NCBI GenBank assembly: GCA_002269645.1
Contig: NIVC01001464.1
Span: 1-64,000 of the forward strand
Direction: 5' to 3'
Source of the DNA: Macrostomum lignano
Lineage: Eukaryota
DNA: 64,000 bases
The position numbers and the translations under genes were made by a program. Below are positions 5,945 to 54,117 of this stretch, one piece after another. The stretch's first letter is position 1; each line of letters begins with the position of its first letter. The notes under the pieces are model-generated. The model saw nothing but the letters and a program-made list of their open reading frames with translations, had not been told where the DNA came from and searched no databases.

Positions 5945-8900
5945 ATGAGCCAAAATCAAAGTCAGCATCAGTTCGTCACGACCGAAAACATCCCGCAAAC
6001 TGCTCGACGTGCCCATGGTACGACATCGTCCAGCTTAAGTGATATCGTTCAGGCCACTCACAGTGCTTTAGACAACGGTGACTTTGAAATCATCAAGTTT
6101 CTCGTCCACAAATCAATGACCAATCAAACAGGGACACCTGCTGCATCAATGCTGCCGAAAAAGCTGCAGACAATGGTCACTTTGAAATCGTCAAGTTTCT
6201 CGTCTCACAAATCAATGACCAATCAAACAGGGACACCTGCTGCATCAAAGCTGCCGAAAAAGCTGCAGACAATGGTCACTTTGAAATCGTCAGTTTCTTG
6301 TCCCACAAATCAATGACCAATCAAAACAGGGACACCTGCTGCATCAAAGCTGCCGAAAAAGCTGCAGTCAATGGTCACTTTGAAATCGTCAAGTTTCTCG
6401 TCCACAAATCAATGACCAATCAAACAGGGACACCTGCTGCATCAAAGCTGCCGAAAAAGCTGCAGACAATGGTCACTTTGAAATCGTCAAGTTTCTCGTC
6501 CACAAATCAATGACCAATCAAACAGGGACACCTGCTGCATCAAGCTGCCGAAAAAGCTGCAGACAATGGTCACTTTGAAATCGTCAGTTTCTTGTCCCAC
6601 AAATCAATGACCAATCAAAAGGGACACCTGCTGCATCAAAGCTGCCGAAAAAGCTGCACAATGGTCACTTTGAAATCGTCAAGTTTCTCGTCCACAAATC
6701 AATGACCAATCAAACAGGGACACCTGCTGCATCAAAGCTGCCGAAAAAGCTGCAGACAATGGTCACTTTGAAATCGTCAAGTTTCTCGTCTCACAAATCA
6801 ATGACCAATCAAACAGGGACACCTGCTGCATCAATGCTGCCGAAAAAGCTGCAGACAATGGTCACTTTGAAATCGTCAAGTTTCTTGTCCTCACAAATCA
6901 ATGACCAATCAAAAAGGGACACCTGCTGCATCAAGCTGCCGAAAAGCTGCAGTCAAGGTCACTTTGAAATCGTCAAGTTTCTCGTCCCACAAATCAATGA
7001 CCAATCAAACAGGGACACCTGCTGCATCAAAGCTGCCGAAAAAGCTGCAGACAATGGTCACTTTGAAATCGTCAAGTTTGTCGTCTCACAAATCAATGAC
7101 CAATCAAACAGGGACACCTGCTGCATCAAGCTGCCGAAAAGCTGCAGACAATGGTCACTTTGAAATCGTCGAGTTTCTTGTCCCACAAATCAATGACCAA
7201 TCAAAAAGGGACACCTGCTGCATCAAAGCTGCCGAAAAGCTGCAGACAATGGTCACTTTGAAATCGTCAAGTTTCTCGTCCACAAATCAATGACCAATCA
7301 AAAAGGGACACCTGCTGCATCAATGCTGCCGAAAAAGCTGCAGACAATGGTCACTTTGAAATCGTCAAGTTTCTCGTCCCACAAATCAATGACCAATCAA
7401 AAAGGGACACCTGCTGCATCAAAGCTGCCGATAAAGCTGCAATTTTTGATCACTTTGAAATCGTCAAGTTTCTCGTCCCACAAATCAATGACCAATCAAA
7501 AAGGGACAACTGCTGCATCAAAGCTGCCAAAATAGCTGCAGACCATGGTCACTTTGAAATCGTCAAGTTTCTCGTCTCACAAATCAATGACCAATCAAAA
7601 AGGGACACCTGCTGCACTGCAATGTCACTTTGAAATCGTCAAGTTTCTCGTCTCACAAATCAATGACCAATCAAAAAGGGACACCTGCTGCATCAATGCT
7701 GCCGAAAAAGCTGCAAATTATGGTCACTTTGAAATCGTCAAGTTTTTCGTCTCACAAATCAATGACCAATCAAACAGGGACACTGCTGCATCAAAGCTGC
7801 CAAAAAGCTGCAGTCAAGGGTCACTTTGAAATCGTCAAGTTTCTCGTCTCACAAATCAATGACCAATCAAACAGGGACACCTGCTGCATCAATGCTGCCG
7901 AAAAAGCTGCAGTCAAGGGTCACTTTGAAATCGTCAAGTTTCTCGTCTCACAAATCAATGACCAATCAAACAGGGACACCTGCTGCATCAAAGCTGCCGA
8001 AAATGCTGCAGACAATGGTCACTTTGAAATCGTCAAGTTTCTCGTCCCACAAATCAATGACCAATCAAACAGGGACACCTGCTGCATCAATGCTGCCGAA
8101 AAAGCTGCAAACAATGGTCACTTTGAAATCGTCAAGTTTCTCGTCTCACAAATCAATGACCAATCAAATAGGGACACCTGCTGCATCAATGCTGCCGAAA
8201 GCTGCATTCCCAGGTCACTTTGAAGACGTCAAGCATTTTCTCTCACAAATCAATGACCAATCAAAAAGGGACACCTGCTGCATCAAAGCTGCCGAAAATG
8301 CTGCAATTATGGTCACTTTGAAATCGTCAAGTTTCTCGTCCACAAATCAATGACCAATCAAAAGGGACACCTGCTGCATCAAAGCTGCCGAAAATAGCTG
8401 CAATTTGTCACTTTGAAATCGTCAAGTTTCTCGTCTCACAAATCAATGACCAATCAAACAGGGACACCTGCTGCATCAATGCTGCCGAAAAAGCTGCAGA
8501 CAATGGTCACTTTGAAATCGTCAAGTTTCTGTCCCACAAATCAATGACCAATCAAAAGGGACACCTGCTGCATCAAGCTGCCGAAAAGCTGCAGTCAAGG
8601 TCACTTTGAAATCGTCAAGTTTCTCGTCCACAAATCAATGACCAATCAAAAGGGACACCTGCTGCATCAAAGCTGCCGAAAAAGCTGCAACAATGGTCAC
8701 TTTGAAATCGTCAAGTTTCTCGTCTCACAAATCAATGACCAATCAAACAGGGACACCTGCTGCATCAAAGCTGCCGATAAAGCTGCAATTTTTGATCACT
8801 TTGAAATCGTCAAGTTTCTCATCTCCTGTGTCTCTAGTCTGGATCAGAGAGCGAATCTCCGTTTCCAATGCGCAATCGCGGCTTGCTCTCGTCTTCACGA

Positions 8901-9538
8901 AAATGTCGTTGCCTCCCTCGGTCTCGAGCCCGACTGGCTCTTTCAATACAACACCATCCTCAGCTTCACTGCAGCAATGGCCATCGAAGACAGAAACTCC
9001 GTTCTCAACAAAACCCTCTCTCAGATGCAGACAGCTCAAATCACACAGCTGCTCCGTCTCTCCATCTCTCAAAGACACGTCGCTCTTGCCGCCACACTGC
9101 TCAATCATCAGCGATTCAGCACACAGCATGTCGATCTCCCAGACGACAACACCGGAGCCACCGCTCTCATGCTGGCAGCTGATGCAGGTCATCACGAACT
9201 CATTCACAAACTCATCGATCTCGGCGCCTCACTGCACGCTCAAGACACTCACGGTCGCACCGCTCTCTCACGAGCCTGCCAAGCCGGTTACGTGCAAGCA
9301 GCCAAGATTCTCATCGACAATGGAGCCGATGCCAGCCATCGAGACAGTCAGGGCCTCACCTGTGCGCAGCTCGCAGAGCGATTTGAGCAGCGGCAGGTGC
9401 TGCGGCTGCTGAATCCCACCGAGTCAGTTGCCATTAGTTGCCATTCTACTTGCAATCACTTCGCTACCTTACCTCGCTTTCCTTCACACATTCCAGAAAC
9501 CCTCAGCACCCACAGCCAGCCGCTCAACGCCTTCATCA
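5945..9538 (+). CDS. ANK-cGLR gene copy A, exon 1: ankyrin array (about 29 units, frameshifted as assembled) plus linker and 3 canonical ANK repeats
   Basis: ATG 5945 homologous to ATG 44141; 99-bp units AAEKAADNGHFEIVKFLVSQINDQSNRDTCCIK; TGATALMLAADAGH...GRTALSRACQAG; donor GTGAGT at 9539, phase 1. Many 1-2 nt deletions between about 6.1 and 8.7 kb. Confidence 0.8.
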
Positions 9539-9635
9539 GTGAGTCTGACCGCTTTCACTGCCCTCTCTTGGGTCGAGCTTGGGCCACGCTTCACTCCACT
9601 GACTCCTTTCTCATCATCCCCCCCCAGACTCTCAG

Positions 9636-9992
9636 ACCACTCCGAGCAAGACCACCGTCTCAGCGAGGAGCTGCATCGACTGCTCAGCGATGCGGGATTC
9701 ACCCATCAGAGAGCAAAGTGTCAGCAGAGACTGGCTGACTGGCTGGAAGGAGTCGCTCAAGTCCTCACACAGGATCGCAGGCAGATGACGGGCAGCTACG
9801 CAGAGGGCTGGGCCAACAGTCTGGTGCAAGTGAACGGCAGGACAGCTGCAGACTCGGACATTGACTGGACTGTGCTGGTTGAAGGGCAAGAGTTCCATCT
9901 GGAAGGTGGCTGCAAAGGAAGATCTGGATCCTGCCAAAACGCCACTCGGCTGCAGGTCACGGAGGGCCACGCACAGGTGGCAGTGGGAGCAG
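9636..9992 (+). CDS. ANK-cGLR gene copy A, exon 2: nucleotidyltransferase N-lobe with catalytic motif
   Basis: Acceptor ctctcAG, donor GTGAGT at 9993, phases match; TGSYAEGWANSLVQVNGRTAADSDIDWTVL = GS...DxD NTase signature. Confidence 0.88.
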
Positions 9993-10233
9993 GTGAGTGA
10001 CGCTGGGTTCATCATCAAAATGCTGAGATCCGCATGCAGCAGGATTCGCTGGATTTGCCCATTAATTTGCTCGAATTTTAATTCAGCCTCCAGCAGCTCC
10101 AAGCAGCTTCTCTGCCATGAGGTTTATATCGTCTGGTTTTTATTCACATATTTTCACCCTTTCTCGCACTGTTTGTAATTTTTTTATTTTTTAAGAAGTA
10201 AGGCAGGGGAATCTCAACAGAAACTTAGCATAC

Positions 10234-11142
10234 ATTGTCATTAATTTTTGCCGGCTTAAGCGTCCCTTTTCCGGGCGTCAATGTGGCAATTCGTGCCTTG
10301 AATTGTCTATGGTATTTTCTATCTCAGTAATAGAGCGAAATAGAACAACAGTGTGAAACAGAGGCAAACAAATAACAGCAGAAGTTAATGTTAATGTTAA
10401 TCTCTGGGCGACTGAGACAGAAGAAGCGATGCAGTCCGGCTCTAATGCAGATGAGACTTGCTGGAGCATAGTACCGCTCGTCCTTTGTTCGCAGTGTCGA
10501 ATAGAAGAAACGCAAATAATTAGCCAGAATCGACTTTGGAATTCGCGGCAGATCCGTTGACAGTTTCATTTCTTCCAGAAAAGTCTTGAAGCGGCTCACA
10601 TTGTCCTCCATCTGCCGGGCGAAGGAGTCCGGTATTCCATCTCGTTCAAGCTGATTCAACTCTTGCATCACGTCCTCCGGAATGTCGAGAATCTCTTCTG
10701 ATTCTATCTTGCGCGCAAATTCTTCGCTCAGTTCCTCCAAATACCGGCTGTTCGACTCGGATGATACCCACGCCAGCTCTTCGGCCGACATACCGGAAAC
10801 CATTTCTCCCGGCAGATTAGAATAATTAATTAAATGGTAGATCATTTTCAGAAGTCAAGCACAGCTTAGTCCTGACAGATTTGAAAAATATCAAATAGAT
10901 TTGAAAAAATATACATTTAGCATTTTTCTAGCTCCTTCAGTTTTACTGTCCATCTCTAGACCTGGACCATCAAAACTTCGTCTATGGCCCAGAGCTCGCA
11001 AATCAAAAGAAAGAATGGCCATAGACATTTCAACTGCATTCTGTGTAATAACACAGAGCCCGGAATTTTCGACATTGATGCCCGGAAATCTCTTGCATTA
11101 ATGACAATAATATAAACATTACTTTTTGCGGGGCATCAATGT
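10234..11142 (-). mobile_element. Crypton-like (DUF3504/tyrosine-recombinase-associated) fragment in intron 2 of copy A
   Basis: ORF 10324-10845: FKTFLEEMKLSTDL...LANYLRFFYSTLRTKDERYYAPASLICIRAGLHRFF resembles the Crypton/ZMYM/KCTD1 N-terminal module; bracketed by inverted motifs 10234-10284 / 11072-11108. Confidence 0.65.
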
Positions 11143-11317
11143 AGAATTTTGTGAGGGCGCGTTATATTATACTCATGTCTACAAAACGCGATACGTTAAA
11201 ACCTGAGCTGAGAGAAAGTAGAAGCGTAAAATAATTTTTCTCTTTCTCGGCCCATCATCAGCTCCATAGCGGTGCCCCTGCAAGCATGAAGAGTTTAAGA
11301 GTGGTGATCAGTCACTC

Positions 11318-12219
11318 AAAAACTCCCACTTCTAGACACTGGGGAACAAGTGCCTAGGTATTTACCAGTTCAAATAACTTACTGCAGCGGATCCTCTTGT
11401 GGTTGGTAGGCTTCTGGTTCTTGCGGTGGGTGTGTGACTCTGCCTGACTTGGTTGAACGGTAGTAGCGGCCGATTTGGAGTAGTCTTCTTGAGTCCTTGA
11501 CTTTTATCTGTGGGTCGACCAAAAACGAGAGCGAATCAGAATTTCTTGACGGTCCTCGAGCTCGGAATTAACAGTAGAACGTGCGCCCTTATGAACAATT
11601 GAATCCTCTAACTTTCTGTGATAGGTCCTCCTGAAGGGCGTCTTCTTCGTTACGTCCGAAACGTAACGGATAACTCAATTCAATTCAATAAATCCTCTAC
11701 GAATGTATCCTAGGAAACAAGGAGGCCTTTCTCAAATGTGTCGAGCGATAAGTGGCTCTCGTATACTCAATTAATCAACTTATTAGCGCTATTAACAATT
11801 AACTAAATCGGGTAAACGCTTACCAATTGGACAGGTGTGGTCCCTCTGTGATTGGTCTTCTTATTTCTTCGGAGTCTTCTTAGAGACCGCCCTGAGTCTG
11901 AATTTTTGACTCGAATGTTGACTTATATTTATAGCAAAATTTTGGAGAAAAACCGGTTTGGGATTGGGTATTTACTTAGGTCAAAAATGTTTGATTAAGC
12001 GGTCATGCATGTTTGAGCATTACCATAGAAAAACAAATACAGCTGTTGAAATCCGGTTCCTTGATCAAACAATGTAGGGTTCTAAATCATTCTGTTTGCG
12101 CGTGATTCCTAAAATAGATATGACTCATATTGAAAGAAATTGACTTCCTTAGAATATTACTTTAAGTAGAGCATTACGGTATGGTCTAATAACTCTCTAC
12201 AAGCATTTTAACGAATTTA
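11318..12219. mobile_element. Unclassified 0.9-kb insertion in intron 2 of copy A
   Basis: Flanks (GCGGTGCCCCTGCAAGC...TCACTCA and CAAAGC.ACTCTCC) are nearly contiguous in copy B (about 47275-47340); no clear ORF, TIR or TSD. Confidence 0.45.
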
Positions 12220-12252
12220 ACAAAGCGACTCTCCTCTCACTGCGCTCTGCAG

Positions 12253-13778
12253 GCAGCCAACCTGCAGTGACAGCCACGGCGTGCGGTGTGCGGCCTGCAC
12301 AAGACACGTGCCATGCGATCGAGTGCTGCAGCAGTTTCTGTAAAAACAGAGTGAAACAACTGCTTGGATACAGCGATCTTGTTCACCTCGTGCGAGCGAC
12401 CAGACCGAGTAAGACCAACGAGCTCAGAGTGAGCTTCAGCTTCCAAGAGAAACACATCATGAGAGACCTGAGCACAGTCCAGGGCCAGCTGTTCACACTC
12501 ACCAAGTTCATCTTCAAGAGACACTTGCCGCTCACTCTGGACACACCTGGACTCAAGACCTACCATGCAAAGACTCTGCTATTCTTCATGCTGGAGAAGC
12601 ATGGCACAGATCCGAAAGCTGAAGCATGGTGGATCCCGCTTGGAATTCATGGCGCTACTAAAGCTGAAGCTTGGCAGCCCCACAATCTGATCACTCTACT
12701 CAAAGAGTCTCTCGACATGATGCTGAGCTTTATCGACTCGAGCAGCTCGCCCGATGAGTGCATGCCGCACTTCTTCATGCCCGACGCTCCGCTCTACTTC
12801 AAGAACGCTGGAATCGGCGGCGACTTCGACAACACGAAGGCGAGGGTTCGAGACCGACTTTGTGAGCTGAGAAGCGACATCGGCGGAGTGGTCGAGCAGC
12901 TGAGGAGACTCGTGAGACCTCTGAAGTCAGAGAAGTTCTACTTTCACCCGTTCACTCTGCTGCCTCTGACAGCGCCGCCTGCTGTCACGGAGATCAGGGA
13001 AGGAAGTGGTCACTATGAGTTTTACTACAAGTTCGCAGACGTGTACAGTGTGGTGCACCAGTGTGTGAGCGAGCTGCAGTCAGAATCGAGTGACAGAGAC
13101 ACCCTGATGAGGCAGCTCAGTCTCCTGAATCATCTGCAGTGGTGCAAGTGCGCCGCCCTGTGCATGACCGCCATGGCGCATTTGAAGTTCGGAGAATCTG
13201 AGGAGGCTAAGAGACTCGCGATGGAGCTTCAGAGACATCAGGTTGAGTCAGGGTTGGAGCCACAGGATATTTATGAAGAGGGTATTTTGCTAAAAAGTAT
13301 AAGACTGCCAAAAGTTTTAGACTGGGCATGGAGGTTCTGCCTCCCCTGCGACTGTCCACCTCGCTTCCCATTCCTTCCCGAGTTCACGCAGACTCTGTTC
13401 ACAGCCAGACTGTCGCAGCCTCTCTCCTCCCACCTGTACGTGAACTTCCGCTGCCTGAGCTGGAGTCTCCAAGCTGAGCTGCTCCGCAATCGCGCACCTG
13501 CAATCGCATTCGATCATTGGATTGAACAGCTGCTTGGAGACCCGGACTTGGAGGAGCTGCTCACTCTGGCTCACTACAGCGACTGCCGCGAGCACGTGGA
13601 GCTCAGCCTGCAGCAGATGGAGATGATCGAGAAAGAGAGACGCGTCGCCATGGAGACGCAGGACGAGGAGAAGATCGGCTGGGTCAGGCAGAAGCTGGAG
13701 GGACTTGATGCAGCATCCGGAGTCCTCAAAGTCGAGTCGCAAAGTCGAGGTCGTAAAAGGAAGGCCGAGTCAGACTGA
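12253..13778 (+). CDS. ANK-cGLR gene copy A, exon 3: Mab-21 core and C-lobe plus helical C-terminal region
   Basis: Acceptor ctctgcAG, phase 1; QDTCHAI (putative third acidic residue), VHLVRA, ELRVSFSFQEK, GLKTYHAKTLLFFMLE, WQPHNL, MPHFFMP match Mab-21 family motifs; open to TGA 13778. Confidence 0.9.
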
Positions 13779-40432: not shown

Positions 40433-41637
40433 CTAATCAGACAGCCAAGGAAACTCAGCTTCCAGCTCTGAATTGGACTGGCCGTCAAGGTAGTCAAATC
40501 TGAGCTCTTGGCCTGCCGCTTCGAATTGAGTTGTCGTAAAGTAAATAGCTGGTCGAGATTTGTCTGGCAAAATAATTAGTCGCTGCTTGCAGTTGGGTGC
40601 CGAATGCGAATGATTTAAATAGCGTCCATTGGAGGAGCTGAATGTCGCATCAACGCAGTACTTTCTGCCGAATGCCTTTTTTCCAGCGTTTGCTACTGTT
40701 ATGGCGCATTCATCACGTAGTTGCAGGCGGCGAATGATATCCTGGTGACTAGTGCATGGTCGATAATTGACATTGCTGCGCAATGCCCTTTCTGGCAGCC
40801 GTCGAAACTCCCTGATGGATACAGCAGAAACCGGCAGACCGGCTTCTGGCGGACCGGCTTCTGGCAGATTGTCTTCTGGCGGACCGGCTTCTGGCAGATT
40901 GTCTTCTGGCAGACCGGCTTCTGGCAGACCGGCTTCTGGCAGACCGGCTTCTGGCAGACCGGCTTCTGGCAGACCGGCTTCTGGCAGACCGGCTTCTGGC
41001 AGACCGGCTTCTGGCAGACCGGCTTCTGGCAGACCGGCTTCTGGCAGACCGGCTTCTGGCAGACCGGCTTCTGGCAGACCGGCTTCTGGCAGACCGGCTT
41101 CTGGCAGACCGGCTTCTGGCAGACCGGCTTCTGGCAGACCGGCTTCCGGCAGAGTGACATCAGGCCGAACGACCTCAGCCAGAGCGCCTTGAGTAGTATC
41201 GTTCTGAACGTCAGACACAGTAGTGACATTGACAGTGACGGAAGTTGAAATTTCTGTTGAAGCTAATCGCTGCTCCAGACGGGGTAAAAAGTCAGTATCC
41301 GGATGTAACGGCTTCGCTGCATTTGTTGGATTCAAGATATAAGTTTTCAGCGCGGTCAAATAGCTTGTTGCAAATTGACGACCCAGGGCTTCAGCCTTGG
41401 CGCCTGACACTCTTTTTTATAAACTTTATATTCACGGCTATGGGCGGACTTGTAGTGCCGCAACATATCCTTCTCAAAATGGGTACAAAGAAGCTGCACG
41501 TCTTTTTTGCGTAACAACTTAGCGAATTCTAGTATTGGTCCAGACTCTCGACCATGAATATTCCTGACGTGTCGTGCAACATTGTCTTTACGACAGTTAT
41601 CGGCACTTGTGCAAAGTGGACAGCTAATTGAAGCCAT
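40433..41637 (-). pseudogene. C2H2 ZnF plus partial SETD8/PR-Set7-like SET domain gene, frameshifted near 41400
   Basis: ATG 41637 CPLC...RKDNVARHVRNIH; second frame carries (PEAGL)n and YCVDAT...GRYLNHS...NC...AGQELRFDY.D...FPWL, matching the KMT5A C-terminal half; the N-terminal SET segment appears deleted. Confidence 0.65.
40829..41150. repeat. 15-bp minisatellite GGCAGACCGGCTTCT (in-frame PEAGL on -)
   Basis: Direct reading. Confidence 0.95.
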
Positions 41638-43357: not shown

Positions 43358-44100
43358 TTCCCCCTCCCTCCCCTCTTTCTCCCTCCCCTCCTTCCCCCTC
43401 CCTCTTTCTCCCCTCTCTCTCCCTCCCTCCTCCCTCCCTCCTCTCTCTCTCTCCCTCCCTCGCCTCTTTCTCCCTCTCCTCCTTCCCCTCCCTCTTTCTC
43501 CCGCCTCCTTCCCCCTCCCTCCTTCCCTCCCTCTTTCTCCCTCCCCTCCTTCTCCCTCCCCTCTTCTCCCGCCTCTTTCTCCCTCCCCTCTTTCTCCCTC
43601 CCTCCCTCCCCTCTCTCTCTCTCCCTCCCTCCCTCTTTCTCCCTCCCTTCCCTCTTTCTCCCTCCCTTCTCTCTTTCTTCCCCTCTTTCTCCCTCCCTCC
43701 CCTCTCTCTCTCTCCCTTCCCCCTCTTTCAGGCTCTCTCTTTCTTCCTCCCCTCCTTCCCCCTCCCTCTTTCTCCCTCCCCTCCTTCTCCCTCCCTCCCT
43801 CCCTCCCTCCTCTCTCTCTCTCTTCCTCCCTCCCCTCCTTCCCCCTCCCTCTTTCCCCCTCCTTCTCCCTCCACTCTTTCTCTCTTCTTCCCTCCTTCTC
43901 CCTCCCTCCCCTCTTTCTCCCTCCCCTCTTTCTCCCTCCCTCCCTCCTCTCTCTCTCCCTCCCTTCCCTCTTTCTCCCTCCCTCTCTCTTTTTTTTCCTC
44001 CCTTCAATCTTTATCCCTCCCCTCTTTCTCCCCCTCTTTCTTCCTTCCTCTCTCTTCCTCCCCTCTTTCTGACTTTCTTCTTAGTGCCTTTCTCTTTCTT
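43358..44100. repeat. Polypyrimidine low-complexity tract upstream of ANK-cGLR copy B
   Basis: About 740 bp of C/T; the ORF-track extension 43310-44140 is an artefact. Confidence 0.95.
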
Positions 44101-44140: not shown

Positions 44141-45545
44141 ATGGACCAAAAACAAAGCCGACTTCAGCAACAGACCACCGAAAACATTATTGCTGCTGCA
44201 CGCAATGGTCGCTTTGAAGACGTCGAGCTTCTCGTCCCACTAATCAATGACCAATCAAACAGGGACACCTGCTGCATCAATGCTGCCGAAAAAGCGGCAA
44301 ACAATGATCACTTTGAAATCGTCGAGTTTCTCCTCTCAAAAATCAATGACCAATCAAACAGGGACACCTGCTGCATCAAAGCTGCCGAAACTGCTGCAGT
44401 TTGTGGTCACTTTGAAGACGTCAAGCATTTTCTCTCACAAATCAATGACGAATCAAACAGGGACACCTGCTGCATCAATGCTGCCGAATGGGCTGCATTC
44501 CCAGGTCACTTTGAAGACGTCAAGCATTTTCTCTCACAAATCAATGACCAATCAAAAAGGGACACCTGCCGCATCAAAGCTGCCAAAAATGCTGCAAATT
44601 ATGGTCACTTAAAAATCGTCGAGTTTCTCCTCTCACAAATCAATGACGAATCAAACAGGGACACCTGCTGCATCAAAGCTGCCGAATCTGCTGCAGACAA
44701 TGGTCACTTTGAAATCGTCGAGTTTCTCCTCTCACAAATCAATGGCCAATCAAACAGGGACACCTGCTGCATCAAAGCTGCCGAATCTGCTGCAGACAAT
44801 GGTCACTTTAAAATCGTCAAGTCTCTCATATCTCGTCTCTCAAGTGACGATCTAAAAGCGAAGCTCCGTTTCCAATGCGCAGTCAAGTCTTGCTCTCGTC
44901 TTCACGAAAATGTCGTTGCCTTTCTCGGCCTCGAGCCCCAATGGCTCTTTCAATCCAACACCATCCTCAGCTTCACTGCTGCTATGGCCATCGAACGCAG
45001 GAACTCCGTTCTCACCGACACCCTCTCTCAAATGCAGCCAGCTCAAATCACGCACCTCCTCCGTCTCTCCATCTCTCAAAGACACGTCGCTCTTGCCGCA
45101 ACACTGCTCAATCATCAGCGATTCAGCACACAGCATGTCAATCTCCCAGACGACAACACCGGAGCCACCGCTCTCATGCTCGCAGCTGATGCTGGTCATC
45201 ACGAGCTCATTCACAAACTCATCGATCTCGGCGCCTCACTGCACACTCAAGACACTCACGGTCGCACTGCTCTGTCACGAGCCTGCCAAGCCGGTCACGT
45301 GCGAGCAGCCAAGACTCTCATCGACAATGGAGCCGATGCCAGCCATCGAGACAGTCAGGGCCTCACGTGTGCGCAGCTCGCACAGCGATTTGAGCAGCGG
45401 CAGGTGCTGCGGCTGCTGAATCCCACTCAGTCAGTTGCAGTTAGTTGCCATTCCACTTGCAATCACTTCGCTACCTTACCTCGCTTTGCTTCACACATTC
45501 CAGAAACCCTCAGCACCCACAGCCAGCCGCTCAACGCCTCCATCA
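44141..45545 (+). CDS. ANK-cGLR gene copy B, exon 1: 7 divergent-type ANK units plus 3 canonical ANK repeats
   Basis: MDQKQSRLQQQTTENIIAAARNGRFEDV...; fully open; donor GTGAGT at 45546, phase 1. Confidence 0.9.
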
Positions 45546-45647
45546 GTGAGTCTGACTGTCTTCCTCCCTTGGGTTAAGCTTGGGCCACTGCAATTTTTCA
45601 ATCCGCCTCCACTGACTCCACTCTCACCTCTCCAACCAGACTCTCAG

Positions 45648-46010
45648 ACCACTACGAGCAAGACCGCCGTCTCAGCGAGGAGCTGCATCGACTGCTCAGC
45701 GATGCGGGATTCACTGAGCAGAGAGCAAAGTGTCAGCATAGACTGGCTGACTTGCTGGAAGAAGTCGCTCGAGACCTCACACAGGATTACAGGCAGATGA
45801 CGGGCAGCTACGCAGAGGGCTGGGCCAACAGTCTGGTGCAAGTGAACGGCAGGACAGCTGCAGACTCGGACATTGACTGGACGGTGCTGGTTGCTGGGCA
45901 AAATCAAAAGTTCCATCTGGAAGGTGGCTGCGAAGGAATAAGGGACTTCTGCAGAGACGCCACTCGACTGCAGGTCAAGGAGGGCCACGCACAGGTGTCA
46001 GTGGGAGCAG
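45648..46010 (+). CDS. ANK-cGLR gene copy B, exon 2: NTase catalytic motif
   Basis: ctctcAG acceptor; TGSYAEGW...DSDIDW; donor GTGAGT at 46011; phases consistent. Confidence 0.9.
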
Positions 46011-46329
46011 GTGAGTGAGGCAGGTTTATCATCAGAATGCTGAGATCCGCATGAAACAGGATTTGCTGGATTTGCCCATTAATCATTCATTTTGATTCGA
46101 TACCGAGTGGCCGAATTTCTGAGTTCACAACTTCAACCTGAGTTCAAAACCTTGCTGAAATACCACCCAGCACTCATTTCGCTTTAAATACAAATTGTGG
46201 CAACCAATTACTCCGATCGCACCTCTCTCATAGAAACAATTATTATGCAATGCCATGCACACACATTATAAGCATGCCTACAATACGCAATACGTGAAAA
46301 CCTGATCTGACAGAAAGTAAAATTCATTT

Positions 46330-47238
46330 GTAGTGCATGCGTCCTTGTCAGTTGGCAGGGCGCGTTGCACTTTGGGGCTGGTGTGGGGGGTTGGCGGGCG
46401 TGGCAGGGTCTGGCTGCCGGCCGGGCTTTGCGCGTGCCCCTCCCCAGCCGTGCCCCTGCCCCGTGCTCAGGGCTGGTTGGCTGCGGCCGGGCCAGCTTTG
46501 GCGCGGGTGCAGCCCCTCCCCCCCCCCCTAGGCGGGGTTTTGATTGGCTGGGCCGGCGTGATTTGTTTTTGTGGGCTTAGCCGGTGGGGCCATCGGCCCC
46601 AGGGTTTGGTTATTAATTGCGGCTCTAGGCCTTGCTCACGCCCTTCGCGCTGTTTCGCTTTTTCTCTGTTTCTCTGTTTGTTCTGTTCGTTCTGTTTCGT
46701 GCTTTGGAATTGGTGTGCTCGGAGAGTACAAGTTCTAGCCTAGACGGTTAAACAGCAACTCCAGCTATAGAATACGAGAAAAGAAACGCAAAAGCCTTAA
46801 GAAGGATCTCGGAGGGTAGAACCTGCACTGTACGAGCTACAACGAGCGAATCAATAAACGAAACGGCGATTTGGCCACTGGTAAGCCGCCTGCTGTTTGA
46901 GTTCTTTCTTTTCTGGGAGATTGTTAGGCTGAGTTCTTGCCAGAGCGTCATAACGCCGGGAGATCATATAGCTTTTGTAGTACTGTACCGTCTACTCTAT
47001 ATAGTGTGTACAACCTACAGTATTGAGACTAGAAGCACTCGAGAGTGTCACCACACCTCGAGCCGCAGCGTGAACTCTGAGTGTCACAAAACCAGAGCGA
47101 TCGGACTATTATCGCAGAGCGTCGTTACGCCTGCTCGTATTCATAAAAGTACAGACAGAGCGTCACAACGCCTGTTACATCACGTATAATATATATTGTA
47201 CTCGGGACTGGGCACCCAAACCGACCCGGGTTACGACA
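46330..47238 (-). mobile_element. Unclassified insertion(s) in intron 2 of copy B, one end LTR-like
   Basis: Not present in copy A; ends in GTTACGACA (TGTCGTAAC on -), a typical LTR terminus; the other end was not found. Confidence 0.35.
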
Positions 47239-47355
47239 CATTTCCTCTTTCTCTGCCCACCATCAACTCTATAGCGGTGCCCCTGCAAGCAGTTTCAAAC
47301 CAAGCCATCTTTTTCACTCACCACAAAGCCACTCTCCGCTCACTGTGCTCTGCAG

Positions 47356-49460
47356 GCAGCCAACCTGCAGTGACAGCCACGGCGTGCGGTGTGCGGCCTG
47401 CACAAGACACGTGCCATGCGATCTGGTGCTGCAGCAGTTTCTGTGAGGACAGAATTAGAGAACTGCTTGATACAAGTGACAATGACAATGCAGTTCATCT
47501 CGTGCGGGCGACCAGACCGAGCTCGACCAACGAGCTCAGAGTGAGCTTCAGCTTCCAGGAGAAACGCATCATGAGAGACCTGAGCACAGTCCAGGGCCAG
47601 CTGTTCACACTCATCAAGTTCATCTTCAAGAGACACTTGCCGCTCAATCTGGACACACCTGGACTCAAGACCTACCATGCGAAGACTCTGCTATTCTTCA
47701 TGCTGGAAAAGCATGGCAAAGACCCTGAAACTGAGGCTTGGCAGCCCCACAATCTGATCGCTCTGCTCAAGGAGTCTCTCGACATGATGCTGAACTTCAT
47801 CGACTCGAGCAGCTCGCCCGATGAGTGCATGCCGCACTTCTTCATGCCCGACGCTCCGCTCTACTTCAAGAACGCTGGAATCGGCGGCGACTTCGACAAC
47901 ACGAAGGCGAGGGTTCGAGACCGACTTTGTGAGCTGAGAAGCGACATCGGCGGAGTGGTCGAGCAGCTGAGGAGACTCGTGAAACCTCTGCAGTCAGAGA
48001 AGTTCTACTTTCACCCGTTCACTCTGCTGCCTCTGACAGCGCCGCCTGCTGTCACGGAGATCAGCGAAGGAAGTTATAAAACTATTTTCGCAGACGTGTA
48101 CATTGCGGTGCACCACTGTGTGAGCGAGCTGCAGTCGGAATCGAGCGACAGAGACACCCTGATGAGGCAGCTCAGTCTGCTGCATGAGCTGCAGCGTTGC
48201 GAGTGCGCCGCCCTGTGCATGACCGCCATGGCGCATTTGAAGTTCGGAGAATCTGAGGAGGCTGAGAGACTCGCAATGGAGCTGCAGAGACATCAGGTTG
48301 AGTCAGGGTTGAGGCCACAGGAAATTCAAAGAGATGAAGACTATGACCAAACTGAATTGCCAGATGACTCAGACTTGGCGTGGAGGTTCTGCCTCCCCTG
48401 CGACTCTCCGCCTCGCTTCCCATTCCTTCCCGAGTTCACGCAGACTCTGTTCACAGCCAGACTGTCGCAGCCTCTCTCCTCCCACCTGTACGTGAACTTC
48501 CGCTGCCTGAGCTGGAGTCTCCAAGCTGAGCTGCTCCGCAATCGCGCAACTGCAATCGCATTCGATCATTGGATTGAACAGCTGCTTGGAGACTCGGACT
48601 CGGAAGAGCTGCTTGGAGACCCGGACTCGGAAGAGCTGCTTGGAGACTCGGACTCGGAAGAGCTGCTTGGAGACCCGGACTTGGAAGAGCTGCTTGGAGA
48701 TTCGGACTCGGAAGAGCTGCTTGGAGACCCGGACTCAGAAGAGCTGCTTGGAGACTCGGACTCAGAAGAGCTGCTTGGAGACTCGGACTTGGAAGAGCTG
48801 CTTGGAGACCCGGACTTGGAAGAGCTGCTTGGAGATTCGGACTCGGAAGAGCTGCTTGGAGACCCGGACTCAGAAGAGCTGCTTGGAGACTCGGACTCAG
48901 AAGAGCTGCTTGGAGACTCGGACTTGGAAGAGCTGCTTGGAGACTCGGACTCGGAAGAGATGCTTGGAGACCCGGACTCGAAAGAGATGCTTGGAGACTC
49001 GGACTCGGAAGAGATGCTTGGAGACCCGGACTTGGAGGAGCTGCTCACTCTGGCTCACTACAGCGACTGCCTCGAGCACGTGGAGCTCAGCCTGCAGCAG
49101 ATGGAGATGATCGAGAAAAAGAGACGCGTCGTCATGGAGACGCAGGACGAGGAGAAGATCGGCTGGGTCAGGGAGAAGCGGTGGCGAGTTTCGAACCGCA
49201 GCGGCAGCGACAGCGGCGCTCACCGCAGCAGGGAAGATGAGGAGCGGAGGCTGTGGGCGAGGGCAAGGCTGCGTCGAGACGGGGCCGACTTGGGGCGCCT
49301 GGTTGCCATGGAAACGGCAGCGGAGCAGAGAGACAGCTGGACTCACGCCAAGCTCAGTCGAATGAGACTGATGAAGTTCGACAGACTTGATGCAGCAGCC
49401 GGAGTCCTCAAAGTCGAGTCACAACGTCGAGACCGGAAAAGGAAGGCTGAGTCAGACTGA
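47356..49460 (+). CDS. ANK-cGLR gene copy B, exon 3: Mab-21 domain plus C-terminal region; spliced CDS 3873 nt = 1290 aa
   Basis: ctctgcAG acceptor; same Mab-21 motifs as copy A; contains a 17x LLGDSDSEE expansion and a net 66-aa insert. Confidence 0.9.
48582..49040 (+). repeat. Coding 27-bp minisatellite, 17 x (L/M)LGD(S/P)D(S/L)EE
   Basis: 459 bp in frame; a single unit in copy A. Confidence 0.95.
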
Positions 49461-50156
49461 CTACCCGGTGAGGTGTTCAATGCTGACACAATTTTCATGT
49501 ACTTTTGGTTTGTACTTTGGGTAGTCGGACTTCGTTGCCCAGATAACTATGATCTGCATTGTTGCTGAAATAAGCACATCGAGAGTCATCGAGTGTGAGC
49601 AGCCCTCCTGCTGTGAACTGCAGTTTCGCACATTTGTGCTGCAATTCAATTCCCACTGCACGCTAAATTGCTTTTTCCCTTCAAACTGCGTGTCTGCTTT
49701 GATGCGGGCTTTTCTCTGCGATTTTGTTCTGCGGACTTCAATACCCAATTGCCACTGCTATTAATGAAATATTCAAGCCAAATGCACAGGCAGCAGTTGT
49801 CTGCGTGAACCTGAAAATTCAAAATTCAGCTGTGTCAGGGAGAAGCTGGAGAGACTTGATGCAGCAGCTTGAGTTGAACTCGTAATTTTGTAAGCCACTC
49901 CGCCTTTTTAATAAATTTTGTTTTTAAATCAAAAATGTTCATTTTAAATATTTACATGTTTAACTTTTTAAACTTAACTGGCTTTTGCGCGAGCTGTTTG
50001 AGAAATTTTACTGTACTGTACATGTTCCTAATGAATATACTGTATTAAATGTACTTTTATGATTTAAAATATTGCATACTCGGGCACTATTTAAGCACCT
50101 GTTCTAGCTCATAGTGAACTCAACCAGTCTGCAAATTGATTTCATCCTGTACCCTG

Positions 50157-51125
50157 CAGTGACTGACAGCCTGACAGCTCCCTCATGAACATTCAGTGAC
50201 TGACAGCCTGACAGCTCCCTCATGAACATTCAGTGACTGACAGCCTGACAGCTCCCTCATGAACATTCAGTGACTGACAGCCTGACAGCTCCCTCATGAA
50301 CATTCTGTGACTGACAGCCTGACAGCTCCCTCATGAACATTCACTGACTGACAGCCTGACAGCTCCCTCATGAGCATTCAGTGACCGACAGCCTGACAGC
50401 TCCCTCATGAACATTCAGTGACTGACAGCTGACAGCTCCCTCATGAACATTCAGTGACTGACAGCCTGACAGCTCCCTCATGAACATTCAGTGACTGACA
50501 GCCTGACAGCTCCCTCGTGAACATTCACTGACTGACAGCCTGACAGCTCCCTCATGAACATTCAGTGACTGACAGCCTGACAGCTCCCTCATGAACATTC
50601 AGTGACTGACAGCCTGACAGCTCCCTCATGAACATTCAGTGACTGACAGCCTGACAGCTCCCTCATGAACATTCAGTGACTGACAGCCTGACAGCTCCCT
50701 CATGAACATTCAGTGACTGACAGCCTGACAGCTCCCTCATGAACATTCAGTGACTGACAGCCTGACAGCTCCCTCATGAACATTCAGTGACTGACAGCCT
50801 GACAGCTCCCTCATGAGCATTCAGTGACTGACAGCCTGACAAGCTCCCTCATGAACATTCAGTGACTGACAGCCTGACAGCTCCCTCATGAACATTCAGT
50901 GACTGACAGCCTGACAGCTCCCTCATGAACATTCAGTGACTGACAGCCTGACAGCTCCCTCATGAACATTCAGTGACTGACAGCCTGACAGCTCCCTCAT
51001 GAACATTCAGTGACTGACAGCCTGACAGCTCCCTCATGAGCATTCAGTGACTGACAGCCTGACAGCTCCCTCACGAGCATTCAGTGACTGACAGCCTGAC
51101 AGCTCCCTCATGAACATTCAGTGAC
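50157..51125. repeat. 37-bp minisatellite family, about 26 copies
   Basis: Direct reading. Confidence 0.96.
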
Positions 51126-51344
51126 CGGACAGGCAGGTCGCAGCCCCCGTCTCAGAGCCAAGAAGACTGCCCTTGATCCTAAGAGTCGAGAGACTCAGAC
51201 TGAGAGACTTGACTCTTTGCCGCACGAGGGTTAATGACATTTGGCAGTTTGAATATTTCTATTTCAAACTCTCACGATTGTTATAAATTCAATTTTTGTA
51301 AATCCTTAAAATTGTAATGTTGTAACTTCTTGCTCTCGTCACTT

Positions 51345-51955
51345 ATAATCACACCCTCGCTCTGTTTTGCCTTTGCTGTGTCTTACTCTCGCTGTGTCTT
51401 AGTGTCTTACCCTCGCTCTGTAAGTGCTCTCGTCACTTATAATCACACCCTCGCTCTGTTTTGCCTTTGCTGTGTCTTACTCTCGCTGTGTCTTAGTGTC
51501 TTACCCTCGCTCTGTTTTGCCTTTGCTGTGTCTTACCCTCGCTGTGTCTTAGTGTCTTACCCTCGCTCTGTTTTGCCTTTGCTGTGTCTTACCCTCGCTG
51601 TGTCTTAGTGTCTTACCCTCGCTCTGTTTTGCCTTTGCTGTGTCTTACCCTCGCTGTGTCTTAGTGTCTTACCCTCGCTCTGTTTTGCCTTTGCTGTGTC
51701 TTACCCTCGCTGTGTCTTAGTGTCTTACCCTCGCTCTGTTTTGCCTTTGCTGTGTCTTACTCTCGCTGTGTCTTAGTGTCTTACCCTCGCTCTGTTTTGC
51801 CTTTGCTGTGTCTTACCCTCGCTGTGTCTTAGTGTCTTACCCTCGCTCTGTTTTGCCTTTGCTGTGTCTTACCCTCGCTGTGTCTTAGTGTCTTACCCTC
51901 GCTCTGTTTTGCCTTTGCTGTGTCTTACTCTCGCTGTGTCTCACCCTCGCTCTGT
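51345..51955. repeat. 56-bp minisatellite (CTCGCTCTGTTTTGCCTTTGCTGTGTCTTACC...)
   Basis: Period 56 (e.g. 51541/51597); copy B only. Confidence 0.92.
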
Positions 51956-52785
51956 CTTGATGTCAGATCCACATAAACTGACAAAAATCGTATCAATTCC
52001 TATATACTACTTGTATTTTTGCGTTTAGTTGCCCCTAATTGGGCCGTTTTACTTTCCTCTTGTGTGCACGATCTATCTAGAGTGTATAATAATTGTACGA
52101 TCGATAAATATTTAGGCCTCTCCATGCTCGTGGCTCACGAAGAGGTCCAGTTTATTACTTTAAATACACAGCCTGGCTCTCGCCTCCGTTTATTACTTTC
52201 GATTCCCTTTCTCTCTACCCCCGACTGCGTGTTTCTAAATATAGCTTCTTCAGTGTTGGTTCATTCTTAGCTATTTGTCCCACCAGCAATTGGACACTCG
52301 CCCGCTCTCTTTCTCGCAGTTTTGGCAAATCCAGTCGCTACTCAGACAGCTCAAAAGCACTGATTGAATGAGAAGCGCTGCACCCATCGGGATGTCGCTC
52401 AGGTGAAGCCGAGAGGAGCAGGGGAGACTCAGTCACAAAATCGATGTCGAAAGGGGTGACGGCTGACGTCTTGGGGATTTCCAGCTGCTATAGTTTGTTA
52501 TTTCAAGCGACGGGCTTTTTGATTGGACGAGATGACCAGCTCGACTCTGATTGGCTCCGAGGGACCTGAGAGGGTCAGAAATCATAAAAATGGGGCAATC
52601 TAGTCAACAAGACGATCCTTCAAAAGACAGACTGGCGCCAAGAGTGACACGTAGGAGCGTAGGAGACCAGACGCCTGTTTATTGCCATTCCGAGAGTGCA
52701 GCAACAGAGACTGACGCAGTTCACCATGCAGAAGTGGCAGACGCCACTGACTCCGCTTCCATCTCCGCTCCCACTTCAGCTGGAG

Positions 52786-53035
52786 CCCATTGACCTCAGC
52801 TGGAGTCCATTGACCCCATTGACCTCAGCTGGAGTCCATTGACCCCATTGACCTCAGCTGGAGTCCATTGACCCCATTGACCTCAGCTGGAGTCCATTGA
52901 CCCCATTGACATCAGCTGGAGTCCATTGACCCCATTAACATCAGCTGGAGTCCATTGACCCCATTGACCTCAGCTGGAGTCCATTGACCCCCATTGACAT
53001 CAGCTTGAGTCCATTGACCCCATTGGCCTCAGCTA
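52786..53035. repeat. 29-bp minisatellite GACCTCAGCTGGAGTCCATTGACCCCATT
   Basis: Direct reading; copy B only. Confidence 0.92.
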
Positions 53036-53127
53036 GAGAAAACAATGACAGTCTGAGGTCGCCTTCCAGTTATCGATTTTCAAAGTGATCAATCAATTTC
53101 CTTTACAGGTGCCAGAAGCTTTGAATT

Positions 53128-53398
53128 GCTCACCAATCTGGCCTCAGCTCACAGTCACCAATGAGTGAGTCACCAATCTGGCCTCAGCTCACAGTCACCA
53201 ACGAGTGAGTCACCAATCTGGCCTCAGCTCACAGTCACCAATGAGTGAGTCACCAATCTGGTCTCAGCTCACAGTCACCAATGAGTGAGTCACCAATCTG
53301 GCCTCAGCTCACAGTCACCAATGAGTGAATCACCAATGTGGCCTCAGCTCACAGTCACCAATGAGTGAGTCACCAATGTGGCCTCAGCTCACAGTCAC
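53128..53398. repeat. 40-bp minisatellite, about 7 copies (partner of 16375-17312)
   Basis: Direct reading. Confidence 0.93.
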
Positions 53399-54117
53399 TT
53401 CAAAAGCAGGTAACAAAGCCGCAGGTCGCCATGGCAACAAAGCATTTATCTCCAAACTCGCGCCCCAGAGGAGCCGCGAGCGCCGCAGGTGCGCAGCCGC
53501 GGTGTTTCTTAGAAATTTTATTTCCGCTCTGACGCCAGTTAGAAAAAAGCACAGGGAAGGTCAGAAGCCGCCGCTGCCGCTGCCTGACTCAAAATTGTCC
53601 ATGCAGCTGGGACGGCGGCGGAGGGACTCGAACTCGGGACCTCAGCAACAACAGAACAGCTGCGGGCGGGCCTGGGCGGGGCGGCGGGTTTGCAAGGCGG
53701 GCAGGGAGGGCAAAGCGGGCAAATTATCAATATGGGGCCGGATGATTAGCAGAGGCTGACTGACCAGCCCGCATTCCTACAGATAACTGATAACCCAATT
53801 AACTGTTTAAATTGGTGCCACTTGAAACAACAGCGATTATAACAAAGGAAAATAATAATTAGAGACACGCAGACGATATACTACTCCCAGTAGGGTGGGG
53901 CGTCACTTTGAACAGCCGGTCAGGTCGCTTATAAATATGAATAAAAAACAGAGCTGGCAGTGGGAGAAGCCCCGGACCGGTGCGGCCGGCTTTGAGACTC
54001 GCCGCGTTTCTAACAAAGCGGTGCACCGCGCCACAGGCGGCTGGGCTGTCAGAGGAGAGACAGTCGGCTGCTCAGCACCGCCCGGCCCAGCCGAAACCCG
54101 CAGCTGCTCAGCCGACC

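What the first reader, a model, noticed from the sequence alone, without database searches (positions are those of the whole stretch)
44141..49460. Ankyrin-array / cGAS-like nucleotidyltransferase (ANK-cGLR) fusion genes: candidate repeat-programmed innate immune receptor family
Seen: three GT-AG exons with matching phases give a 1290-aa ORF: N-terminal ANK array, GS...DxD motif (GSYAEGW...DSDID), a putative third acidic residue (QDTCHAI), Mab-21 C-lobe motifs, and a helical tail. A second paralog lies at 5945-13778. Established: animal cGLRs of the Mab-21 fold synthesise nucleotide second messengers on ligand binding. Inference: the long ANK array could act as a sensor or autoinhibitory module, giving an NLR-like 'variable repeat + signalling enzyme' design. 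I cannot tell whether this architecture has been functionally described.
Basis: partly seen in the sequence, partly recalled or inferred. Interest (0 to 1): 0.85.

Follow-up and report, generated by a model that had tools for sequence, protein, structure and literature searches.

The report
Flatworm ankyrin-repeat cGAS-like enzyme gene
This is a real, intact gene of the flatworm Macrostomum lignano that joins an ankyrin-repeat array to a cGAS-like nucleotidyltransferase; it belongs to a large species-specific family that a 2023 survey of cGAS-like receptors already catalogued, so it is interesting but not new.

Summary
Window 44141-49460 (+) encodes GenBank protein BOX15_Mlig025919g1 of Macrostomum lignano. 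The deposited model has 4 exons and 1268 aa, not 3 exons and 1290 aa. It has six near-identical 33-aa ankyrin units, canonical ankyrin repeats, a Mab21/cGAS-fold domain, a family-specific C-terminal domain and an acidic 9-aa repeat tail. An AlphaFold model (pLDDT 81) matches only cGAS, MAB21L1 and MB21D2 in the PDB. The cGLR motif is present (TGS, X20, DID, X59, D) and intact in 32 of 38 paralogs. A few paralogs have lost several active-site residues together. The family has at least about 50 members, and every named relative is from M. lignano. The window holds two copies inside a 36-38 kb tandem duplication. Variation among ankyrin units sits in codons 17, 20 and 21, on the usual ankyrin binding face. 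ANK-cGLR fusions, including this family, were catalogued by Li et al. 2023. They screened ANK-less constructs of five M. lignano ANK-fused cGLRs (two are close paralogs), and none is among their 15 actives. Immune function, product and receptor remain inferred.

The parts
44141..49460 (+). Whole coding span of the ANK-cGLR gene (BOX15_Mlig025919g1, 1268 aa), start codon to stop codon
Evidence: The four-exon join translates exactly to P0001.
44141..45429 (+). Exon 1: N-terminus, 33-aa ANK-unit array, helical linker, canonical ANK repeats
   Evidence: Ank_2 1.9e-32, Ank 1.2e-22, Ank_3, Ank_4 and Ank_5. The donor is GTCAGT at 45430.
44243..44836 (+). Six tandem 99-nt (33-aa) ankyrin-like units, consensus INDQSNRDTCCIKAAExAAxxGHFEIVEFLLSQ, with variable codons 17, 20 and 21 (also 6 and 13)
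   Evidence: TRF gives period 99, 6.4 copies, 84% matches, no indels. Units are listed. Per-codon pN is 0.36 at codons 17/20/21 against 0.055 elsewhere.
45158..45429 (+). Canonical ankyrin repeats (about aa 340-430)
   Evidence: Best Ank, Ank_3, Ank_4 and Ank_5 stretches fall at aa 347-414.
45430..45503 (+).
45504..45545 (+). 42-nt micro-exon encoding the linker NPQHPQPAAQRLHQ
   Evidence: It is needed to reproduce P0001. The same linker is present in paralog models P0018 and P0002.
45546..45639 (+). Intron 2 (94 nt, GTGAGT..AG)
45640..46010 (+). Exon 3: NTase spine helices and N-lobe with T-G499-S500 (45800-45808) and D519-S-D521-I-D523 (45863-45877)
   Evidence: Sequence. The AF2 model shows helices, then strand, GS, loop, then a strand starting at D-I-D. 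G and S are invariant, D521 is kept in 34/38 and D523 in 36/38 paralogs. This exon alone has no Pfam hit.
46011..47355 (+). Intron 3 (1345 nt, GTGAGT..CAG). It is not alignable to the 2.2-kb intron of the paralog apart from its ends.
47356..49460 (+). Exon 4: rest of the NTase core (D585 at 47406-47408, R-V-S-F-S and T-Y-H-A-K-T motifs), Mab-21_C, C-terminal extension, acidic repeat, basic tail, stop codon
47646..47861 (+). Mab-21_C (PF20266) match, containing the TYHAKT motif that aligns to SYHVKT of cGAS
   Evidence: Pfam 29.2-30.1 bits against cut-off 24.1.
48012..48593 (+). Family-specific C-terminal extension (aa 787-980): four TPR-like helices plus a small beta-sheet. It holds the family's most conserved block, DWAWRFC..FPFLPEFT..LYVNFRCLSWSLQAELL.
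   Evidence: AF2 pLDDT 81.5, pTM 0.83. There is no significant PDB fold match; the best is E 0.5 to TPR proteins over about 70 columns.
48576..49045 (+). In-frame 27-nt minisatellite, 17.4 copies, encoding LLGD(S/P)D(S/L)EE. The paralog and other family members have one copy.
   Evidence: TRF 92% matches, no indels. Protein comparison.
5945..13778 (+). Tandem paralog (BOX15_Mlig009614g1, partial model P0018): about 28 ANK units (6070-8820), then the same linker, NTase and extension
   Evidence: The frame changes in its array are almost all 1-nt deletions in A-runs.

Best explanation
The gene encodes a cytosolic ankyrin-repeat cGAS-like receptor (ANK-cGLR). It is one member of a large, tandemly duplicating family that so far has been found only in Macrostomum lignano.

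Shown:
- An intact spliced ORF.
- An ANK array followed by a cGAS/Mab21-fold nucleotidyltransferase that keeps the activation-loop GS, the D-x-D pair, the third Asp, and the RxSxS and [ST]YHxK nucleotide-contact motifs.
- These residues are kept in most paralogs and lost together in a few.
- Repeat units that are almost identical except at codons 17, 20 and 21.
- An acidic NTase core (pI about 6).

Inferred mechanism: the ANK solenoid presents its variable helix-1 face to a ligand, more likely a protein or other non-nucleic-acid molecule than dsDNA or dsRNA. Binding relieves inhibition or drives assembly of the NTase. The NTase then makes a nucleotide second messenger that is read by a receptor not yet identified in this animal. 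Unit number and the variable residues would set specificity, and gene duplication spreads the repertoire.
For: Identity and integrity: P0001 is 100% identical and is rebuilt exactly from four exons.

Fold: the AF2 model of the core has pLDDT 81 and pTM 0.85. All top-50 Foldseek PDB hits are cGAS, MAB21L1 or MB21D2, with best E 7.8e-8, probability 1.0 and target TM 0.5-0.56. Mab-21_C scores above its Pfam cut-off.

Motif: it fits the published cGLR definition h[QT]GS X8-20 [DE]h[DE]h X50-90 [DE] as M-T-G-S, X20, D-I-D-W, X59, D. The R-V-S-F-S block aligns to FRLSFS of coral cGLRs. TYHAKT aligns to SYHVKT of cGAS.

Constraint: 32 of 38 paralogs keep G, S, D, D and D. P0040, P0037 and P0041 lose D521 and D585; three paralogs - apparently the same three - also carry the R629->Q and Y674->H substitutions. 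P0010 loses D523 and D585. dN/dS between the two window copies is 0.39 for the Mab21 core.

Immune-like evolution: at least about 50 paralogs at 30-86% identity, and 88 clusters at 50% identity with E<1e-30. All 10 sampled strong hits are M. lignano. The window copies sit in a tandem duplication. Unit number ranges from 1 to 15 in gene models and about 28 in paralog A.

Variable face: pN is 0.36 at codons 17/20/21 against 0.055 elsewhere, and the same positions have the highest entropy family-wide. Positions 20-21 are the 'AAxxGH' pair, which by my knowledge of designed ankyrin repeat proteins corresponds to randomised binding positions 13/14.

Ligand type: the NTase core pI is 5.97, whereas Li et al. 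report a high pI for nucleic-acid-sensing cGLRs.

Context: some family members are annotated with a C-terminal ANK + caspase module.
Against: - No activity is shown. ANK-less constructs of five ANK-fused M. lignano cGLRs (two of them close paralogs of this gene), one 83% identical to this gene, were in the Li et al. screen, and none is marked active. This could mean a missing ligand or missing ANK domain, poor expression, or a dead enzyme.
- The N-lobe is too diverged for Pfam PF03281, for PDB sequence profiles or for hhalign to align it. The placement of D521, D523 and D585 in the active site therefore rests on motif spacing and the secondary-structure order of the model, not on a residue-level superposition, because no coordinates were available.
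- The GS-to-DxD spacing is at the upper limit (20), and the third Asp is flanked by Q and T, not hydrophobic residues.
- dN/dS in the N-lobe exon is about 1.5 over 121 codons, untested for significance.
- Surface positions vary under neutral drift too. pS at the three variable codons is also high, so diversifying selection is not demonstrated.
- cGAS and STING are reported lost in flatworms generally (PMC4117786) and absent from Schmidtea (PMC13563047). Whether M. lignano has STING was not tested.
- No expression data were available here.
Confidence: 0.5

Rival explanations
1. It is a pseudo-enzyme scaffold. The Mab21-fold domain binds a nucleotide or nothing, as MAB21L1/2 or MiD51 do, and the protein acts through ANK-mediated protein interactions with no second messenger.
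For: There is no PF03281 hit and the N-lobe is very diverged. None of the five M. lignano constructs is listed as active in Li et al.. The protein is acidic. N-lobe dN/dS is relaxed. STING is reported absent from other flatworms. Some paralogs clearly are dead.
Against: The full set of catalytic and nucleotide-contact residues is kept in 32 of 38 paralogs and decays as a block only in a minority. That pattern is what is expected if the set is functional in the rest. MAB21L1-type proteins lack the acidic triad (Li et al.).
Confidence: 0.25
2. It is an active nucleotidyltransferase with a different chemistry or read-out, for example linear 2'-5' oligonucleotides as in OAS, or nucleotidylylation of a bound protein target held by the ANK array. 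It would act without STING.
For: The fold superfamily includes OAS-type enzymes. ANK arrays typically hold proteins. No STING is known in flatworms. A conserved extra C-terminal domain of unknown fold could be a partner or effector module. Caspase-fused relatives exist.
Against: There is no direct evidence for it. The closest structural matches are cGAS itself, and the motif fits the cGLR definition.
Confidence: 0.15
3. It is an annotation or assembly artefact: the ANK gene and the NTase gene are separate, or the locus is a decaying pseudogene in a repeat-rich region.
For: The window is dense with minisatellites and mobile-element fragments. Paralog A's array is frame-broken in this assembly. 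Several family gene models are obvious chimeras, with ABC-transporter, RT, Ig or kinase domains attached.
Against: Gene B is open over all 1268 codons. Only 74- and 94-nt introns separate the ANK exon from the NTase exon. The first Met of the NTase exon lies just before the GS loop, so the domain could not be made on its own with its spine helices. More than 40 models from two independent annotations share the ANK + Mab21 core. dN/dS is below 1 on the core. Paralog A's indels are 1-nt losses in A-homopolymers, which is typical of long-read consensus error.
Confidence: 0.05

Closest known systems
cGAS-like receptors (cGLRs) of animals, Mab21 / CD-NTase superfamily (Li et al. 2023; Drosophila cGLR1; human cGAS, MB21D2)
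   Same: Same fold, a Mab-21_C hit, the GS activation loop, the [DE]h[DE]...[DE] triad, and the RxSFS and [ST]YHxK motifs. Lineage-specific gene radiation also occurs in corals, bivalves and insects.
   Different: The N-lobe is very diverged, with no PF03281 hit. The core is acidic rather than basic. It has an N-terminal ANK array and an extra conserved C-terminal domain of about 190 aa. No product, ligand or receptor is known. It occurs in a phylum otherwise reported to lack cGLRs and STING.
ANK-cGLR fusion architecture catalogued by Li et al. 2023 (Fig 1C, S2A, Table S2; e.g. Stylophora pistillata ANK and death-domain fusions; M. lignano PAA68676.1, PAA86972.1, PAA45980.1)
   Same: Exactly this architecture, and for the M. 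lignano entries this same family. PAA68676.1 is P0014, which is 83% identical over the core.
   Different: This particular locus (Mlig025919g1) was not singled out. The paper does not describe the near-identical tandem units with variable residues, the C-terminal extension or the caspase-fused relatives. It assayed only ANK-less constructs.
MAB21L1/MAB21L2 (developmental Mab-21 proteins)
   Same: Same fold; 5eog/5eom are among the sequence and fold hits.
   Different: Those proteins lack a predicted functional active site (Li et al.). This family keeps one in most members.
Repeat-array recognition proteins with position-specific variable residues (designed ankyrin repeat proteins; by analogy TALE repeat-variable di-residues, lamprey VLRs, NLR LRRs)
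   Same: Tandem near-identical units in which variation is focused on a few surface positions. Positions 20-21 match the ANK 'AAxxGH' binding positions (plus my knowledge of ankyrin repeat design).
   Different: No ligand is known and no selection test was done. Helix 1 is one turn longer and the hairpin loop shorter than in canonical ANK. The link to the enzyme's activation is hypothetical.

Membership tests
cGLR (cGAS-like receptor) | cGAS/Mab21 bilobed nucleotidyltransferase fold | tested here: met
   AF2 pLDDT 81, pTM 0.85. The Foldseek PDB top 50 are all cGAS, MAB21L1 or MB21D2, with E down to 7.8e-8 and probability 1.0.
cGLR (cGAS-like receptor) | Pfam Mab-21 domains (PF03281 NTase lobe, PF20266 C-lobe) | tested here: inconclusive
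   PF20266 is met at 29-30 bits against cut-off 24.1. PF03281 gives no hit, even on the spliced NTase region.
cGLR (cGAS-like receptor) | h[QT]GS activation-loop motif | tested here: met
   M-T-G499-S500. G and S are invariant in 38 paralogs. The definition comes from Li et al..
cGLR (cGAS-like receptor) | [DE]h[DE]h 8-20 residues after GS, at the start of the next strand | tested here: met
   D521-I-D523-W comes 20 residues after S500, at the upper limit. The model has a strand starting there.
cGLR (cGAS-like receptor) | Third acidic residue 50-90 residues later, on a strand (h[DE]h) | tested here: inconclusive
   D585 is 59 residues after W524, lies in a predicted strand and is kept in 32/38 paralogs. 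It is lost together with N-lobe acids in P0010 and P0040/37/41. Its flanks are Q and T, not hydrophobic. No residue-level superposition was possible.
cGLR (cGAS-like receptor) | Ligand-dependent synthesis of a cyclic nucleotide second messenger | not testable with these tools
   Published screen: ANK-less constructs of five ANK-fused M. lignano cGLRs (two close paralogs of this gene), including one 83% identical to it, are not marked among the 15 active enzymes with poly I:C + dsDNA.
cGLR (cGAS-like receptor) | A cognate receptor (STING or other) in the same genome | not tested
   No M. lignano proteome was searchable by family. The literature reports STING absent from other flatworms. M. lignano is not in Li et al. 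Table S5.
Ankyrin-repeat proteins | Tandem ~33-aa helix-turn-helix repeats matching the Ank profiles | tested here: met
   Ank_2 1.9e-32, with its best stretch at aa 117-199 inside the 33-aa array. Ank, Ank_3, Ank_4 and Ank_5 hit the canonical repeats. The period is 99 nt.
MAB21L1/2-type inactive Mab-21 proteins | Absence of the catalytic acidic triad | tested here: not met
   The triad is present in this gene and in 32/38 paralogs.

The most novel reading that the evidence does not exclude
The near-identical 33-aa ankyrin units, with repeat-variable residues at positions 17, 20 and 21 and widely varying unit number, form a programmable recognition array. That array gates a cGAS-like enzyme, so M. 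lignano would have evolved an NLR- or VLR-like diversified receptor repertoire built on cGLRs. It would signal through a non-STING route, and some members may be wired directly to caspases.
Probability: 0.2. Interest if true: 0.8.

Novelty: new member of a known kind. Interest (0 to 1): 0.4.

Why it matters
cGLRs are now seen as a major animal family of pattern-recognition receptors, yet most have no known ligand. Flatworms are usually described as lacking the pathway. M. lignano is a transgenic, RNAi-tractable flatworm with dozens of ANK-fused cGLRs. It could show what non-nucleic-acid ligands cGLRs sense, how an appended repeat array controls the enzyme, and what reads the signal when STING may be missing. 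The focused variability in the repeat units gives a concrete, testable handle on specificity. For the scan itself the main message is sobering: the gene and its architecture are already in GenBank and in a published catalogue.

Tried and rejected
- Pfam on the GS/DxD exon alone, and on the spliced NTase region, gave no PF03281 hit.
- PDB sequence searches with the single sequence and with a 14-paralog profile aligned only the C-lobe.
- hhalign of the family profile against four coral cGLRs taken from Li et al. Table S3 aligned only 50 columns around RVSFS (probability 24%), so it could not confirm N-lobe residue equivalence.
- Model coordinates are not exposed, so no residue-level superposition or ANK/NTase contact analysis was possible.
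- A fold search of the C-terminal extension alone gave nothing significant; the best hit was E 0.5, TPR-like.
- Rfam and tRNA scans of the window found nothing.
- STING in M. lignano: I began collecting invertebrate STING sequences from the PDB, but only vertebrate entries ranked. The word-indexed protein search would be swamped by vertebrate STINGs, so I did not spend it. The question stays open.
- Literature searches for Macrostomum plus Mab-21, cGAS or STING found no study of this family other than Li et al..
- Pseudogene reading of paralog A: not adopted, because its indels are 1-nt deletions in A-runs. It is not excluded either.
- Gene-merger artefact: rejected (see the rival explanations).

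Full report
**What is there.** The window is genomic DNA of the free-living flatworm Macrostomum lignano. A protein search with the spliced product returned BOX15_Mlig025919g1 (P0001, 1268 aa) at 100% identity. The deposited protein, however, is reproduced exactly by four exons: 44141-45429, 45504-45545, 45640-46010 and 47356-49460. The difference is 39 versus 17 linker residues between the ANK and NTase parts. The start, the stop and the 1345-nt intron are as stated.

**Domains.**
- Exon 1 hits all the Pfam ankyrin families (Ank_2 E 1.9e-32). The best Ank_2 stretch lies inside the array of 33-aa units, and the best single-repeat hits fall on canonical repeats at aa 347-414.
- The last exon hits Mab-21_C (PF20266) at 29-30 bits against a cut-off of 24.1.
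- The exon carrying GS...DSDID has no Pfam hit, and PF03281 is never hit.
- PDB sequence searches align only the C-lobe (TYHAKT to SYHVKT of cGAS; E 0.03 for the single sequence, 8e-5 for the profile).

**Fold.** I modelled the 538-residue core with an alignment of 14 paralog cores (A1). AlphaFold2 gave pLDDT 81.1 and pTM 0.85. In Foldseek against the PDB, all 50 best hits are cGAS, MAB21L1 or MB21D2. The best E is 7.8e-8, probability is 1.0, and target-normalised TM is about 0.5-0.56.

**Active site.** Li et al. define cGLRs by h[QT]GS X8-20 [DE]h[DE]h X50-90 h[DE]h. The protein has M-T-G499-S500, then 20 residues, D521-I-D523-W, then 59 residues, Q-D585-T.
- In the model, GS follows the first strand, D-I-D opens the next strand, and D585 sits in a long strand.
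- The block ELRVSFSFQEK aligns to FRLSFS of coral cGLRs.
- Across 38 full-length paralogs, G and S are invariant. D521 is kept in 34/38, D523 in 36/38 and D585 in 32/38. R629, S631, Y674 and K677 are kept in 34-37/38.
- The exceptions are correlated. P0040, P0037 and P0041 lose D521 and D585, and three paralogs - apparently the same three - carry the R629->Q and Y674->H substitutions. P0010 loses D523 and D585.
- This joint decay in a minority argues that the set is functional in the majority.
- I could not obtain coordinates, so residue placement is inferred from motif spacing and topology, not from superposition.

**Family and genomic context.**
- The word-indexed search found about 50 M. 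lignano proteins at 30-86% identity, nearly all with Ank plus Mab-21_C.
- A full HMMER scan of 1.84 billion representatives found 88 clusters with E<1e-30 and 179 with E<1e-10.
- All 10 strong hits I looked up are from M. lignano.
- The next tier, at E about 1e-14, is ordinary Mab-21 proteins (PF03281 + PF20266). They come from unnamed eukaryote assemblies and an annelid.
- One 55%-identical relative sits on a metagenome contig.
- The window holds two copies, and they lie in a 36-38 kb tandem segmental duplication (about 6.0-27.1 kb versus 44.2-62.4 kb). The duplication also carries an RRM-protein ORF and many minisatellites.
- dN/dS between the two copies is 0.48 (linker plus canonical ANK), 0.39 (Mab21 core), 0.72 (extension) and about 1.5 (N-lobe exon, 121 codons, with the catalytic block unchanged).

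**The ANK array.**
- Gene B has six 99-nt units. Paralog A has about 28. Family gene models have 1-15.
- Units are nearly identical (pS 0.03 and pN 0.055 outside three codons). Codons 17, 20 and 21 have pN 0.36, with recurrent multi-nucleotide alternatives such as GACAAT, GTCAAG, ATTTTT, AATTAT and TTCCCA.
- Family-wide, the same positions, plus 9 and 13, have the highest entropy.
- Positions 20-21 are the xx of AAxxGH. From my knowledge of designed ankyrin repeat proteins, these are binding-surface positions 13/14. Positions 13, 17 and 20/21 follow helical periodicity.
- This fits a recognition surface, but it is not a selection test.
- Paralog A's frame changes are almost all 1-nt deletions in A-runs. 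I read these as probable long-read assembly error.

**Other parts.**
- The roughly 190 residues after the Mab21 core hold the family's most conserved block. They model confidently (pLDDT 81.5) as four TPR-like helices plus a small sheet, but no PDB fold matches significantly.
- A 27-nt in-frame minisatellite (17.4 copies) adds an acidic LLGDSDSEE tail that is unique to this copy.
- The NTase core has pI 5.97 and the whole protein 4.87. Li et al. associate nucleic-acid sensing with a high pI.

**What is already known.**
- Li et al. 2023 (bioRxiv 10.1101/2023.02.22.529553 / PMC9980059) list ANK-fused cGLRs as a domain architecture (Fig 1C, S2A, Table S2).
- They state that most platyhelminths have no cGLRs beyond Mab21-like proteins.
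- Their Table S2 includes M. lignano entries with Ank_2.
- Their Table S3 includes five M. lignano constructs, #89-93, cut to start at or just before the NTase core so that they lack the ANK array. Among them are PAA68676.1 (my P0014) and PAA93208.1, both close paralogs of this gene.
- The 'Note' column that names the 15 active enzymes is blank for all five.
- cGAS and STING are reported lost in flatworms (PMC4117786) and absent from Schmidtea (PMC13563047).
- I found no paper on this family's function.

**Verdict.** The architecture is real and likely catalytically competent. The immune-receptor reading is reasonable but unproven. The architecture is already catalogued for this very family. 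The focused repeat variability, the unmatched C-terminal domain and the caspase-fused relatives are not described in the preprint text I read, and my literature searches found no other study of this family.

Noticed in passing
window ~6000-27100 vs ~44200-62400: A tandem segmental duplication of about 36-38 kb at 84-98% identity. It carries the ANK-cGLR gene, an RRM-domain ORF (23121-24059 and 59111-60046, minus strand) and a shared series of minisatellites in the same order.
   Followed up: partly
window 6070-8820: Paralog A's ANK array has about 28 units. Its many frame changes are almost all single-base deletions in A-homopolymers, plus one 24-nt deletion at 7583-7657. That pattern looks like long-read consensus error, not decay.
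   Followed up: partly
window 48576-49045: An in-frame 27-nt minisatellite (17.4 copies) encodes LLGD(S/P)D(S/L)EE repeats. Paralog A and other family members have a single copy. This copy also has an extra basic insert of about 65 aa near the C-terminus.
   Followed up: partly
L002 6001-9651 (NIVC01002235.1); proteins P0064, P0195, P0066: Some family members are annotated as Mab21-like NTase + ANK + caspase (Peptidase_C14, E about 1e-25). In L002 one uninterrupted ORF (6430-8430) holds Mab-21_C plus ANK, and the caspase domain lies in the next ORF 290 nt downstream. The caspase join is by annotation only.
   Followed up: partly
window 48012-48593 (P0001 aa 787-980): The family-specific C-terminal domain contains the most conserved sequence block of the family. 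It models confidently but has no significant structural match in the PDB.
   Followed up: yes
window 1849-5363, 14565-43988, 50157-61475: Minisatellites are exceptionally dense, with periods of 14-48 nt and up to 123 copies (for example 32432-35171, 22 nt x 123.5). A CT-rich low-complexity tract (43358-44070) ends about 70 nt before the start codon.
   Followed up: no
window 292-1293 (+), 29654-30376 (-), 62693-63907 (-), 40433-41410 (-): There are two retroelement integrase (rve) fragments, a tyrosine/Ser-Thr kinase C-lobe ORF and a SET-domain fragment with GLTT repeats. The nearby kinase may explain family gene models that carry a fused kinase domain (for example P0010).
   Followed up: no
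window 10324-10845 (-): A 173-aa ORF lies on the opposite strand inside the large intron of paralog A. It has no Pfam hit. The intron is 2.2 kb here against 1.3 kb in gene B, and the two are not alignable apart from their ends.
   Followed up: no
L001 (JGI metagenome 3300040801, contig Ga0450804_0621447): A 467-aa protein 55% identical to the NTase core sits on a 3.2-kb environmental contig. It is the only strong relative found without an M. lignano label, and it suggests the family also exists in a related worm.
   Followed up: partly
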